64,000 nt of DNA from Octopus sinensis (Eukaryota). The translations under genes and the position numbers were made by a program. Position 1 is the first letter of the stretch. Every line of letters starts with the position of its first letter. The notes under the pieces are model-generated. The model searched no databases, had not been told where the DNA came from, and worked only from the letters and a program-made list of their open reading frames with translations. The stretch is from positions 66,972,464 through 67,036,463 of the forward strand of contig NC_043011.1 in assembly GCF_006345805.1 (NCBI RefSeq), written 5' to 3'. Positions 546 through 59,150 of this stretch are shown in pieces.

Positions 546-2621
546 GTTTGAATTTTTATAAGTATATATATATATATGTATGTATGTATGTATGTATGTA
601 TGTATTGAAAATTAAGAACTTTGACATGGAAACAAATAGATGGATGCTCACAGCCATGCTTTACTCTAAAGGTTGCATGCACTCCATACTTTGTATAACG
701 TTATGTAATATTTTGATAAAATATAGTAGGAATGAAAAACTGAAGCTGACTTCTTTTAAAATAAGTATTTAATATTTTCGGAACTAATGGTTGGAAATAC
801 TTTCACAACAATACAAATATCTGCTGTATTTGCATAATATTTATTCATATTTGTATGAGTATTAGAGTTACAATCGCAGGAACGAATACTGATTCGATGT
901 TCCCCTGTAAAGAGCAGAAAAATATATTTATATATATTGACGAACTTTTAATATAAACAAAAAAGAAAGCAGATTTCGTTTTTTTTTTTCTGCTAGTACT
1001 TTCATGCTTCACAATTTTAAATGGTATTAGCCAGTCAACGAACGACATCTCATTATACTTTTCTACGCTTCACTAGTTTCAATCCTTAAACTGCAGTTAT
1101 ACAAGAATACCGACGTGAAGACTTTTACTCCAACATGTCGCAGCTAATGCTCAAATTTGCGACTCGTACTTATTATGTCTTGATTCTCTCCCCTGAACCA
1201 CTTATTGACCAGGGCATAAACAATCTAACAACTGTTACAATGTTCACTCACAAGGCTTTTGTCAGTCCTAGCTTGTACTATGGGTCATTTGCGTAATTTG
1301 CCGCGTATGAGATTTCAGCCTGAACCAAAGGATTGCGAGATCAGCTTCTTATTGCGCAGGTGCTGATTGTTATGTGAATGCTTTTAAATTTAACTACAAA
1401 AATCTAGTGATTACTTTGATAGGTTATACTCTTTCTTTTATACTATTGCCAGCGTGTTATGATTATTGAAGTCCATATGTATTACTGCGATATGCTATAC
1501 TTAACGCATGTTAAACTTTCTGTAATATTATCGTAACAACACCAGTTTATAGAACTTCATTTTTAAGGAAGCATTCTCTGAACGCGATAGTGTATATTTT
1601 AGATTACAAGCAATGGTGACATGTATTACATATCTATCGCATCAACGTCACTGTAAATCGCTCTAATATTCCCCCTAGTGCATTGCAATATCATATTAAT
1701 ACGGGAGAGAGAAAGAGAGTGAGAAATCATGTAATATACGCTGTATCAGCACCTTAATGTGGCTGATGGCAAGAATAATAGCAATGAAAGTATGCTGTAA
1801 TGCTACAATAAAATTTAGCAGGTTTGGCATGGACGGTAGGCTGTTTGTTTTATCGTCAATTTAGTTTAATTGTAGTCTTATTCCAAAGGCTTCACATACT
1901 ACCACAATTGCGGTTATTAGAGAAAAAATTCGCCGGTGTAACTATGAAACATATCTCTCAAATTTACATAATCGTAATAATATATGGATGTGTCAGCATC
2001 AGTAGGAACGTATTGCTTACCCCAATTTTGCTACCGGAAGTGTTTGGTTTCTTCGTCGTACCTCCCTGGAAACAACGTATTGATATGTTGTGAAAACCAT
2101 TCACACATGATCGGAAACTTTTCCAACACAACATGACAAATGATAGAGGGTACTTTCTATTAAAAATCTTTCGAAACTTTATGGGTCCTTCCTAACATCC
2201 TGATTGATTTCGTCCACAAAACACACTGAGAGACTCCTGTACTTTCGGGAATAAAGCAAAAATATTTTTGAAAATTTATGAATTATTCAAATCCCCCTCC
2301 AAAAGAAAATACTGATTTTGGCCATTTTTTGTATTGCACTGCGCACTTAAAAACGATAGGAAACGCCTTGAAGATCAAAATAAAATCGAAATATATTGGA
2401 ATCATTAAAAGTTCCACTTGCTGCGTTTTCAAGCAGAAATATACCCAGAGGAAATTTATCGTTCTCTGCCCAATATACAAGCCATTATTCTATGCTCTTT
2501 TAATTGTCAGCAAGATAGCAAAGCAATTAGCATACCGGACAAATTGATTTTTGTTCCGAACGCAGTTTAAAATTCTGCCGCTGCCTGCATTCGCATTCAT
2601 CATTTTGGTGTCGATAAAATA

Positions 2622-3811
2622 TCAGGTCACCCCATAAGTTCTGTCCGATTTTACCTTTTTTTAAAATTGAATGAAATTGAATTGTATTTTAGAATGTCTA
2701 ATAGAATTAAAAATTAGTTTTATGCATTAGTGTCCATTTAAACTAATTAAATGTTATTTTACAGAATAATAGAATTAAAATTTCTTTGATTAAAATCCTT
2801 TCTAACATGAAAGTATCAAGAGCATTTGAGGCACATAATGCTTTATGGGTACAAAAAAGGGAACTCTGCCGCCGGAGAAATTTACACGCAGATTATGGGA
2901 AAGAATGCTTGAATGAAAAATCTTCCAGCAGATTTTTTGCAAAATTCAGAAGTGGAAATTTCAGGCTTGAAGATGAAGATCGAACAGGACGAATTGAAGA
3001 ATTGAAAAGTTGGCAAAAAAGCATGGTTCAAACCATGCAACTGTTCATCGTCATCTTCAACAACTTGGAAAATGGGTGCCTCATGAATTGTCCGAAAGCA
3101 TCCGCAAATCCCGGGTTAACATCTGCTCTTCCCTCCATTCTCGCGACGTTATTTCACCCTTTTTGGATAGACTTGTGACTGGTGACGAAAAATGGACATC
3201 CTATCCTAAAAAGTGGTTTGGTTAAAGGGAAAAAAGCTCAACGAAAACCGAGAAGGGAACTTCATGGAAAAAGCTTTCTTCTCTTTATCGCATGTGATTG
3301 CAAAGGAGTAATTCTAACTTGTTACCACCTAATGCAACAATCAATGCTCAAGTCAGCAATTAGAGTGTTTGAACCAAGCTTTGAAGAAAAAGACCCGCTT
3401 TAGTGAATCGAAAAGGAGTAATGTTTCATCAGGACAATGCGCGACCCCACACTGCAAAGATCACATCAGAGATGATAGAAAAGCTTGAGTGGGAGAAAAT
3501 CCTCAACCACCTTATTCTCTTATTTTCCCGACCTTACTCCTTCAGACTACCATTTGTTTTGTAGTTTACAGAATCATTTGTCGGACATAACTTTCGCAAG
3601 ACAGGTCGATGTTGAAACTGATATTTCAGTAATGCTCGCTTTGAAACCAGAAGAGATTTACATTGATGGGATTAAAAAGCTTGTAAATAGATGGAAGGAT
3701 GTCATAGATAATCAGGGAAAGTACATTGATGATTAAATTTCAATAAAATATTACATTTGATCACTCGTTCTCTTTATTCAAAATTCAGTTAAAACTTATG
3801 GGATGACCAGA
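2622..3811 (+). mobile_element. Mariner (DD34D-type) transposon, decayed transposase
   Basis: TIRs TCAGGTCACCCCATAAGTT / AACTTATGGGATGACCAGA flanked by TA. Fragments DRLVTGDEKW, FHQDNARPH and YFPDLTPSDYHLF, with frameshifts. Confidence 0.95.
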
Positions 3812-4384
3812 TAAATAACATTCAGGTTTTTGGGGCGCTGCGATCGATTTCCTCCTCTCCTCAAAACTGCCGGAACTGTGCTTAAATTTGAAACCATTAT
3901 ACTAGTATCGATTAAAAAATCATGCCAGTAATATACCGCGGATGCACAGAGACTATTAGAGGAAATACTGCAAGCATGGTAGCTGCATCTATGATTGATC
4001 TTGTTACGTCATTGTCGGCAAGTTCTATTTTGTATTATTTTCTATTTAAAAAAAAAAGAAACGTAACTAATTAACAAATACATTCTTTACTCGATTATTC
4101 CTTCAAAGGTGTATTTTAGAGCGGTTCATGTGATCTTATCTTTCTACAATGAAACTATTCTTTCTCAAACAATCGTTTCTATTTTAGTTAAGGCGGGAAG
4201 TGTAAAAGAAATTAAACAAATAGGATTGATGCAAATGACTTATCATACACTTATGGAAATGAACAATGTGAAAACATCTTCTACAATATTTGTCTAATTC
4301 TTTCGTACATCCTTCAAACTTCTTGTAATCTCTGAAAGATGAAAATATGATTGAATGTTCTCTTCTGATCTAAGTACAAGGACA

Positions 4385-4505
4385 GAAATTTGGCGGGGGA
4401 GGATGCCAGTCGATTAGCTCGACCTCAGTACGTAACTGGTACTTAATTTATCGACCCCGAAATTATGAAAGGCAAAGTTGACCCCAGTGGACATTTGAAC
4501 TCAAA
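4385..4505 (-). mobile_element. Partial SINE, same family as the 32992-33870 array
   Basis: GTAACTGGTACTTAATTTATCGACCCCGAAA...AAAGGCAAAGTTGACC matches the reverse complement of the array unit. Confidence 0.75.
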
Positions 4506-57374: not shown

Positions 57375-57761
57375 TCTCTCTCTATATAAACGGCAGTTTG
57401 TCTCTGTGTGTTTCTGTGTGTCTGTTAGGTTGTACCCTCACCCTGACCACGGCTTTCAACCGATTCTGATGAAACTTGACACACACATAGCCCAATGTCA
57501 TAATTCAAAGCTAACGCAGCGAAAATTTTGAAAAGTTCCCCCAGTTCTGAAAAAAATCGATAAATTCGACATGGGGTCGAGAATCAGAAACACAAACCAC
57601 AAACTGTCTAGGGCGCAACTCCACCTTTTTAACTCTCGAAAAAAAAAATTTACCATCATTTTTTTTTTCCATTTTTTTGCTATTTTTTGGCTATAACTCT
57701 CTAAAATTGCTTTATAGTTATTTCCCTTACAAACCCGAGCAACGCCGGGCGATACTGCTAG
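57375..57761 (+). mobile_element. Non-autonomous Helitron
   Basis: Inserted between A and T; 5' TC(TC)TATATAAA; internal AACCGATTCTGATGAAACTT; subterminal hairpin CCCGAGCAACGCCGGG; 3' CTAG. Confidence 0.9.
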
Positions 57762-57879
57762 TCTTACATATTACGATCCTCTCATATTATTAACGCAGGA
57801 ATGACTAATGATTTTTCGGGTATGATTGAAGTATTTTATTAATATCCATTGTCAAATTGTGAGTCTACTTATATGTGAA

Positions 57880-59150
57880 CAATCTTAATGAAGCTTTCCC
57901 GTTTACGCAGTTCTTATGAATTTGTATTAAAGCGGCGTTCTGTTTATAATGCAGGAAATTATTGCCATGTAAGTTAATAAAGCTATATTAATCCTTAATA
58001 GCCTCTCATAATAGCAGAAGACGCTTATATCAATGTGTTACTACAATACTGGAGATCATCTATTGCAGAGAATACAGGATATATGTTTTATCGTCAACAT
58101 ATTTATTGGAATTCATCCGTGAACCAACTCATTATTAATATTTTAGCACAATAATATCCTAATAATGGTAAGAATAATTGTAACGATGCAAACATATATG
58201 GCGTATTTAATTAAATAATATATCCTTTTTTGGATCAGTAAATATCGATGCACACTTCATCCTTCTATGAATAATGGAATGTAGATATCCAGCCTTCGTG
58301 GCTTTCTATCCAAAGAATTTTCCAACCCAATATTTACGTGTTATTACATGTAGCTTTATGTGCCCTACAGTTCCTAAAGAGAATTATTTCATGTTCCCGC
58401 GTACAATTATAAATTACGATGAATAACAGACCATATTAGGAACCTATAAGATGATGGTTGTTTGTAGAGCTGGATGTTAATTTATTATTGAATGGTAATT
58501 TTACTTCCATTATTCGGCCAAATGTCTCACAGCTATCATAAAAATACTGTAGTAGTATCATATTAAAATGTGAGATATCATTCACATTGAATCACTAATG
58601 CAGTTGTAAATAATGTAAAGGAGTTACGTACCCTATATTCATTTCTAGAGTTTTTATAACGACGGCTATGCTGAAAACAAAAACATAAACCTACGTATGT
58701 ATTTTGAATTTTAAATCCGAAAGAAAATTCAATGTATCATAGAACGGAAAATAATTGTACAAAACAAAAGAACGTTAAAAATCCAATCCCAGTACGTCTT
58801 GTTCAACATAACAAATATAAGGAATAGATTGTATAAGCAAAATGAACAAAAAATATTTTGTGTCTCTGATAGTGAACATTGCGTTTCGTCATATTGTGCT
58901 GAGATTGCTCAAAATAAGTATTTGACTGCGACCTTTTACATAGAATGTAAGAGAATCACATATATGTATATAAAAGCGGAACTGTGCTGAACGTATTACC
59001 ACCCACAGAAGTCTACAACAAAGCCGTACCTAATGCACAAAATCGCTTTATCAACAAGTAGTTTCAATTAGAAGCGGACCTAAAGCGGAATACACGTAAC
59101 ACGATAGGAAAGGCTAATACATTCAATATGAATTTAACAAACACAAATGC
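57880..59150 (+). pseudogene. Decayed coding-like unit, copy 6
   Basis: Anchors ATAATAGCA, CTACAATA, GTTTTATCGTCAA (58085), TGTAACGATGCAAACATAT and CATGTAGCT (58347), colinear with copy 1. Confidence 0.45.

What the first reader, a model, noticed from the sequence alone, without database searches (positions are those of the whole stretch)
1520..59150. About six co-oriented fossil copies of a ~1.7-2 kb unit: probable dead tandem gene cluster
Seen: colinear short anchors recur on the + strand at ~1.5-5.2, 8.5-8.9, 25.0-26.8, 37.5-41.4, 44.9-46.6 and 57.9-59.2 kb. Examples are GTTTTATCGTCAA at 1847/25303(variant)/58085, AGTGC..TGCAATAT.ATATTA at 1677/44993, GAAATTATGAGTA at 8873/26540, TGGTTGATTT at 26366/41256 and TGTAGAAATA at 8819/46608. 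By eye the identity is roughly 60-70%. One shared orientation and independent TE insertions in each copy favour old tandem duplication over a dispersed TE. The TEs seem to fill the space between and within these copies. Support for the 37.5-41.4 kb copy is weakest.
Basis: partly seen in the sequence, partly recalled or inferred. Interest (0 to 1): 0.7.

Follow-up and report, generated by a model that had tools for sequence, protein, structure and literature searches.

The report
Two decayed non-coding duplicates, not six
The supposed six-copy dead gene cluster is really one old duplication of a ~2.9-kb stretch of non-coding, repeat-containing DNA (two copies, one swollen to 11 kb by transposon insertions), which is ordinary in a transposon-rich animal genome.

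Summary
Sensitive alignment against shuffled controls links only three of the six claimed intervals, and those three make two copies. Copy A is 758-11820, which includes claimed copies 1 and 2. Copy B is 24150-27051, claimed copy 3. They share five colinear plus-strand blocks at 60-69% identity (K2P about 0.4-0.57). The claimed copies at 37.5-41.4, 44.9-46.6 and 57.9-59.2 kb match nothing in the set. Copy A is stretched from about 2.9 kb to about 11 kb by a decayed mariner, a LINE tail and SINE fragments. Both copies carry the same very old SINE fragment at the same aligned position, so the duplicated segment already contained that repeat. I found no sign of a gene: no Pfam domain in six frames, no frame-specific protein similarity, no codon periodicity and no stable RNA fold. 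The unit ends have no TIR, LTR, poly-A tail or TSD. The best reading is an ancient local duplication of non-coding DNA (about 0.55). The main rival is two copies of an old low-copy interspersed repeat (about 0.33). I could not test genome-wide copy number. Interest is low.

The parts
758..2097 (+). Copy A, block 0. It aligns to B 24150-25575. Real homology is limited to about 758-1200 and about 1590-2097. The middle is at random level.
   Evidence: blastn E=3e-26 for 1587-2095 against 25052-25573, and nhmmer E=1.6e-61; sub-window identities are 0.72-0.54 and 0.64-0.70 at the two ends, against 0.46-0.51 in the middle. Shuffled sequence gives about 0.45.
2434..2503 (+). Copy A, a small block aligning to B 25603-25672 (weak on its own)
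   Evidence: score 111, 70% identity over 70 nt, colinear with the chain; nhmmer E=0.15 on its own.
3890..4094 (+). Copy A, block 1, aligning to B 25647-25855
   Evidence: E=1.7e-10 to 3e-16, 66% identity, K2P 0.47.
8689..8890 (+).
   Evidence: z about 16.; nhmmer E=4.6e-7. E=7e-5; 64% identity.
11671..11820 (+). Copy A, block 3, at the right end of the homology, aligning to B 26908-27051
   Evidence: E=8.7e-8.. E=1.9e-12; alignment; 69% identity, K2P 0.40.
24150..27051 (+). Copy B, the compact copy of the unit (about 2.9 kb), containing all five blocks in the same order and orientation
   Evidence: There is no Pfam domain in six frames. The ends have no TIR, TSD or poly-A tail.
1053..1358 (-). 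Old R1 SINE fragment nested in copy A
   Evidence: R1 profile hits at 1236-1053 and 1358-1245; its 3' end is at alignment column 466. K2P 0.45-0.49 to the R1 consensus.
24444..24661 (-). Old R1 SINE fragment nested in copy B, at the same aligned position as in A
   Evidence: E=4.9e-15; its 3' end is at column 470, against 466 in A. K2P 0.41.
2620..3813 (+). Decayed mariner-like transposon inserted in copy A only
   Evidence: 33-nt TIR pair at 2620-2652 and 3781-3813, 79% complementary. Mos1-type HTH_48 split over two frames, E=7.8e-5 and 2.7e-3, both below Pfam's cut-off.
4377..4504 (-). R2 SINE fragment inserted in copy A only
   Evidence: nhmmer E=2.3e-16 against the 184-bp unit..
6117..6733 (+). 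Truncated, internally deleted LINE ORF2 tail inserted in copy A only
   Evidence: the hits are APE+RT proteins of about 1,040 aa; tblastn maps P0001 residues 684-770 and 920-1037, E=2e-37.

Best explanation
A segment of non-coding genomic DNA about 2.9 kb long was duplicated locally in direct orientation a long time ago. The segment already contained fragments of two short interspersed repeats, R3 at its left end and an R1 SINE next to it. The two copies now start 23.4 kb apart. Both have decayed neutrally to 60-69% identity. Copy B (24150-27051) stayed compact. Copy A (758-11820) was stretched to about 11 kb by later insertions: a mariner, a LINE fragment, SINE fragments, microsatellites and unidentified sequence. 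The unit has no detectable function. It is a fossil of a duplication event, not of a gene family. Shown by the tests: two copies only, colinearity, the shared nested SINE, insertions specific to copy A, and the absence of coding or RNA signals. Inferred: that the mechanism was a local segmental duplication and not transposition, and that decay was neutral.
For: Five colinear plus-strand blocks are each significant on their own. In a self-comparison tuned for divergence and masked for repeats, this is the only multi-block co-oriented chain. A degraded minus-strand R1 SINE ends at alignment column 466 in A and 470 in B. It is among the oldest R1 copies in the window, with K2P 0.41-0.49 to consensus against 0.13-0.39 for most others. 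The A-B distance is 0.40-0.57, about 0.2-0.28 per lineage. The order of events is therefore SINE insertion, then duplication, then the young SINE insertions. Profiles of blocks 1-3 and of the 3' half of block 0 find no third copy on either strand. The unit ends have no TIR (11-13 of 40 matches), no TSD, no LTR and no poly-A tail. There is no coding signal. RNA folding is unremarkable: mean z 0.07, minimum -2.93 over 218 windows. The extra length in A is at least partly identifiable TE sequence.
Against: Genome-wide copy number could not be measured. The proxy search of translated frames returned nothing, not even the window's own ORFs, so it says nothing either way. The left edge of the A/B homology lies within about 6 bp of the left end of another R3 copy at 18772. 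That fits a unit beginning at a TE terminus. Old TE families often lose their hallmarks, and about 64% pairwise identity is typical of two copies of an old family. About 12 kb of unexplained sequence lies between the copies, so a strictly tandem origin is not shown. Only 757 bp lie to the left of copy A in the window, so the true left extent is uncertain.
Confidence: 0.55

Rival explanations
1. A and B are two near full-length copies of an old, low-copy, non-autonomous interspersed repeat of about 2.9 kb and unknown class. They happen to lie 23 kb apart in the same orientation. R3 would be the 5' terminal part of this element, which also occurs as short fragments elsewhere.
For: R3-like fragments occur at 18772-19012, 57077-57272 and 23715-23792, and one shares the unit's left boundary to within about 6 bp. 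The pairwise identity of 60-69% is typical of old repeat families. The window is densely packed with TEs.
Against: There is no TIR, LTR, poly-A tail, TSD or coding capacity. Outside the R1 and R3 parts the unit has no third copy in 64 kb on either strand. It carries a nested fragment of a different SINE that is older than the A/B split, so the master copy would have had to be composite.
Confidence: 0.33
2. This is the first reader's reading: the remains of a tandem array of about six paralogous genes that are now pseudogenes riddled with TEs.
For: Two co-oriented copies do exist and have independent TE insertions. In octopods, tandem arrays of protocadherin, C2H2 zinc-finger and GPCR genes are documented (PMC9795677), so the prior is not zero if the host is an octopod.
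Against: Four of the six claimed relationships are at null level. No claimed copy has a cadherin, zinc-finger, 7TM or any other Pfam domain. Protein-level matches are weaker than the DNA identity and occur on both strands. There is no codon periodicity. The only long ORF in a claimed copy is a retroelement tail.
Confidence: 0.03
3. The homology islands are kept by selection as duplicated regulatory elements or non-coding RNA genes, while the unconstrained sequence between them has decayed beyond recognition.
For: The homology comes in islands, with intervening B sequence (25855-26368 and 26557-26908) that has no counterpart in A.
Against: Rfam at gathering thresholds finds nothing in the window, and there are no tRNAs. 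Folding z-scores match the null. Island identity is only 60-72%, as expected for neutral decay, and two of the islands are themselves old repeat fragments. Insertions and deletions explain the gaps more simply.
Confidence: 0.05

Closest known systems
Ancient local (intrachromosomal) segmental duplication, or low-copy repeat, of non-coding DNA
   Same: Two co-oriented, colinear copies lie tens of kb apart. The duplicated segment includes pre-existing interspersed repeats at matching positions. Each copy acquired its own later TE insertions.
   Different: The usual working definition of a segmental duplication (at least 1 kb and at least 90% identity; from my own knowledge) is not met. This pair is far older, at 60-69% identity. 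Whether the pair is unique in the genome is unknown.
Old unclassified interspersed repeat family of the kind de novo repeat finders report as 'Unknown'
   Same: Non-coding, a few kb long, copies about 35% diverged from each other, set among other TEs, and sharing a terminus with short fragments elsewhere (R3).
   Different: No structural hallmark of any TE class. Only two copies of most of the unit in 64 kb. A nested older SINE fragment is shared by both copies.
Tandemly duplicated gene arrays of octopods: protocadherins, C2H2 zinc fingers, GPCRs (PMC9795677)
   Same: Direct orientation and local clustering of paralogous sequence.
   Different: No coding remnant of any kind, two copies and not an array, and the host taxon was not established with the tools.

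Membership tests
Tandem gene or pseudogene cluster | Three or more mutually homologous units | tested here: not met
   Only c1-c3 and c2-c3 exceed the shuffled null, and they form two copies. The intervals c4, c5 and c6 are at null level.
Tandem gene or pseudogene cluster | Recognisable remnant of a protein domain in the units | tested here: not met
   A six-frame Pfam scan of copy B found nothing at E<=0.01. The ORF pieces of c4, c5 and c6 gave nothing. The only domains in the window are TE domains.
Tandem gene or pseudogene cluster | Similarity between copies specific to one reading frame, or codon-position bias of substitutions | tested here: not met
   The tblastn hits are weak (38-49% identity over at most 45 aa), lie in several frames and on both strands. 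Mismatch phase gives p>0.09 in all 24 segments.
Local segmental duplication | Multi-block colinear homology in a consistent orientation | tested here: met
   Five blocks in the same order, all on the plus strand.
Local segmental duplication | Pre-existing repeats shared at matching positions in both copies | tested here: met
   The 3' end of the minus-strand R1 SINE is at column 466 in A and 470 in B, and it is older than the A/B split.
Local segmental duplication | At least 1 kb and at least 90% identity (the usual working definition) | tested here: not met
   Identity is 60-69%. It can only be called an ancient duplication, not a segmental duplication in the operational sense.
Local segmental duplication | Low copy number genome-wide (unit not dispersed) | not testable with these tools
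   The host genome is not searchable here. The proxy search of translated frames returned no hits, not even self-hits. Within the window the copy number is 2.
Interspersed repeat or transposable element family | Terminal structures (TIR, LTR or poly-A tail) and target-site duplication | tested here: not met
   The first 40 nt against the reverse complement of the last 40 nt match at 11-13 of 40 positions. There is no TSD, no poly-A tail and no internal direct repeat. At this age decay could have erased them.
Interspersed repeat or transposable element family | Many dispersed copies in both orientations sharing the same termini | tested here: inconclusive
   Within 64 kb only the first ~250 bp (R3) has further copies, all on the plus strand. 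The rest has none. Genome-wide copy number was not testable.

The most novel reading that the evidence does not exclude
The homology islands shared by A and B are duplicated functional non-coding elements, such as enhancers or an unannotated lineage-specific RNA locus. Selection would have preserved them while the surrounding sequence decayed, so the pair would be a duplicated regulatory module and not junk.
Probability: 0.04. Interest if true: 0.35.

Novelty: already known. Interest (0 to 1): 0.07.

Why it matters
It matters little biologically. An ancient two-copy duplication of non-coding, repeat-bearing DNA in a TE-rich region is routine in large animal genomes. The value is methodological. 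Colinear 10-13-mer anchors picked by eye in an AT-rich 64-kb window are expected by chance in the hundreds to thousands, and here they inflated a real two-copy signal into a six-copy 'gene cluster'. The shared nested SINE gives a clean relative order of events (SINE insertion, then duplication, then later TE insertions). That order could serve as a local dating marker if the locus is ever compared across species.

Tried and rejected
1. I searched the large protein collection with two translated plus-strand frames of copy B, as a proxy for genome-wide dispersal. There were zero hits, not even self-hits, so the search says nothing either way.

2. I ran a combined search of unexplained long ORFs. 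Only the 6380-6736 ORF matched, and it is a LINE ORF2 tail. The best named relatives were a shrimp and a lancelet at 46-51% identity, so the host taxon was not established. I ran no further search on it, because the taxon does not change the verdict.

3. I considered a partial third copy just upstream of B (23715-24011, an R3 fragment followed by a minus-strand R1 fragment). The alignments are only 54-64% identical over short stretches, so I did not count it.

4. I asked whether the duplication extends beyond 11.8/27.05 kb. The R1 copies at 12239 and 28242 are colinear, but the 28242 copy is young (K2P 0.13), so it is an independent insertion. The matches 17111-17343 against 35369-35664 are accompanied by an inverted match, so they look like another repeat and not a continuation.

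5. Structured RNA: Rfam, tRNA and folding z-score scans were all negative.

6. Pfam did not detect the DDE domain of the mariner, and it found nothing in the 8.9-10.9 kb gap of copy A. That gap remains only partly explained. From memory the 9224-9889 ORF looks like a Tc1/mariner DDE, and the ORFs at 36.3 and 42.3 kb look like GIY-YIG domains. No tool result supports either impression.
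Full report
**Setting.** The window is 64 kb with 34.8% G+C. It has many AT, TATG and TAGA microsatellites and no Rfam or tRNA hit. It is packed with transposable-element remnants, so it looks like intergenic or intronic DNA of a large animal genome. The tools did not establish the taxon. The best named relatives of one LINE fragment are from a shrimp and a lancelet at 46-51% identity.

**Check of the observation.** In this AT-rich sequence, however, Markov shuffles give about 100-380 same-strand 13-mer pairs and about 5,000-11,000 10-mer pairs. 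Such anchors are therefore not evidence of homology. I aligned all 15 pairs of the six claimed intervals locally on both strands, with microsatellites masked, against shuffled controls. With stringent scoring only c1-c3 stands out (128 against 27+/-3). With scoring tuned to 60-70% identity, c1-c3 scores 605 against 61+/-7 and c2-c3 scores 155 against 56+/-6. A c1-c5 signal appears only on the minus strand and comes from a shared SINE fragment. All other pairs have |z| below about 2.6. The claimed copies at 37.5-41.4, 44.9-46.6 and 57.9-59.2 kb are unrelated to the rest.

**What is really there.** Chaining local alignments between 1-13.5 kb and 23-28.5 kb gives a colinear plus-strand series:
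- A 758-2097 with B 24150-25575
- A 2434-2503 with B 25603-25672
- A 3890-4094 with B 25647-25855
- A 8689-8890 with B 26368-26557
- A 11671-11820 with B 26908-27051

BLAST finds most of these on its own: E=3e-26, 1.7e-10 and 8.7e-8, and 3.6e-35, 3e-16, 7e-5 and 1.9e-12 with +1/-1 scoring. So does nhmmer (E=1.6e-61, 2.4e-14, 4.6e-7 and 1.2e-6). The small 2434-2503 block is not significant on its own (nhmmer E=0.15) and rests on its colinear position. After masking SINEs and microsatellites, this is the only multi-block co-oriented chain in the window. Copy 3 is the compact copy B of about 2.9 kb. Identity in the blocks is 60-69%, with K2P 0.40-0.57. The middle of block 0 (about A 1210-1590) is at the level of shuffled sequence, 46-51% against about 45%. 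The others are chance matches.

**Why copy A is long.** Several insertions sit in the gaps of A relative to B:
- A decayed mariner at 2620-3813. It has a 33-nt TIR pair and a Mos1-type HTH split over two frames.
- A fragment of the 184-bp R2 SINE at 4377-4504.
- A truncated, internally deleted LINE ORF2 tail at 6117-6733. It matches residues 684-770 and 920-1037 of APE+RT proteins of about 1,040 aa.
- Microsatellites at 11130-11554.

The 8.9-10.9 kb stretch has no Pfam match, and that gap remains only partly explained.

**Composition of the unit.** The first ~250 bp is a small repeat, R3. Further plus-strand copies lie at 18772-19012, 57077-57272 and 23715-23792. Right after R3, both A (1053-1358) and B (24444-24661) carry a minus-strand fragment of R1. 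R1 is a SINE of about 435 bp with a tRNA-like head and at least 13 copies in the window, in both orientations. The 3' end of R1 falls at alignment column 466 in A and 470 in B, so the insertion is shared. These nested R1 copies are among the most diverged in the window (K2P 0.41-0.49 to consensus). Free-standing copies range down to 0.13. The A-B distance implies about 0.2-0.28 per lineage. The order of events is therefore R1 insertion, then duplication, then later insertions, including the young R1 at 28242.

**No gene.**
- Copy B has no Pfam domain in any of six frames at E<=0.01.
- The ORF pieces of c4, c5 and c6 have none.
- tblastn of A's frames against B gives only weak hits (38-49% identity over at most 45 aa), in several frames and on both strands. 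That is weaker than the DNA identity.
- Mismatches show no 3-base periodicity in any of 24 ungapped segments (p>0.09), and no frame is consistently open in both copies.
- The families known to form tandem arrays in octopods are protocadherins, C2H2 zinc fingers and GPCRs (PMC9795677). None left any trace here.
- The only long ORF in a claimed copy (c4, 39348-40004) matches 2,454 proteins. In the long ones the match lies at the extreme C-terminus, downstream of an RVT_1 domain, so it is a retroelement tail. A second fragment lies at 40777-41010.

**No RNA signal.** Folding z-scores over 218 windows of the unit, on both strands, have mean 0.07 and SD 1.05, with a minimum of -2.93.

**Duplication or transposon?** The unit ends have no terminal inverted repeat (11-13 of 40 matches), no target-site duplication, no LTR and no poly-A tail. 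Outside R1 and R3 there is no third copy in 64 kb on either strand. Both copies also share an older nested SINE. These points favour a local duplication of a genomic segment. Against this, the left edge of the homology coincides to within about 6 bp with the left end of another R3 copy. Old TE families also lose their hallmarks and typically show this level of pairwise identity. The decisive test is copy number in the host genome, and I could not run it. A proxy search of translated frames against the large protein collection returned nothing, not even self-hits, so it says nothing either way. I put local duplication at about 0.55, an old low-copy interspersed repeat at about 0.33, constrained non-coding elements at about 0.05 and a dead gene cluster at about 0.03.

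**Verdict.** The 'dead tandem gene cluster' interpretation is not supported. The weaker claim of an old co-oriented duplication with independent TE insertions is supported for the single pair. The feature is of a known, ordinary kind, and interest is low.

Noticed in passing
window 15849-16164: A perfect 316-bp palindrome: 158-bp arms, 100% identity, no spacer, flanked on both sides by AT microsatellites. A related arm-like copy lies at 14-100. It could be a recent foldback or MITE-like element, or an assembly artefact.
   Followed up: partly
window 333-562, 14893-15072, 17651-18008, 31484-31918, 38392-38608, 53691-53746, 63231-63411: There are many further imperfect long palindromes (63-93% arm identity), several next to AT microsatellites. 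This is an unusually high density for 64 kb. Their nature is unknown.
   Followed up: no
window 33036-33875 and 30087-30393: A 184-bp SINE-like unit (R2) is arranged as about 4.5 tandem copies. An inverted partner array of about two units lies 2.6 kb upstream. Fragments also occur at 4377-4504, 44691-44766 and 45463-45563.
   Followed up: partly
window 54329-56005 (-): A Tc1-like DNA transposon with long terminal inverted repeats of about 260 bp (84% identity). Its ORF pieces carry HTH_Tnp_Tc3_2 and DDE_3 domains, and the reading frame is broken.
   Followed up: partly
window 48211-51138 (+): A LINE with endonuclease (Exo_endo_phos_2) and reverse transcriptase (RVT_1) domains split over several ORFs. 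The region has 46-47% G+C against 35% for the window, which suggests a fairly recent insertion.
   Followed up: partly
window 23715-24011: An R3 fragment followed by a minus-strand R1 fragment lies directly upstream of copy B and mirrors the first ~500 bp of the unit. It may be a very degraded partial third copy. The alignments are too weak (54-64%) to count it.
   Followed up: partly
window 17111-17343 with 35369-35664 (+), and 17553-17626 with 35264-35191 (-): Another low-copy repeat is shared between about 17 kb and about 35 kb, partly rearranged. It is unrelated to the A/B unit.
   Followed up: no
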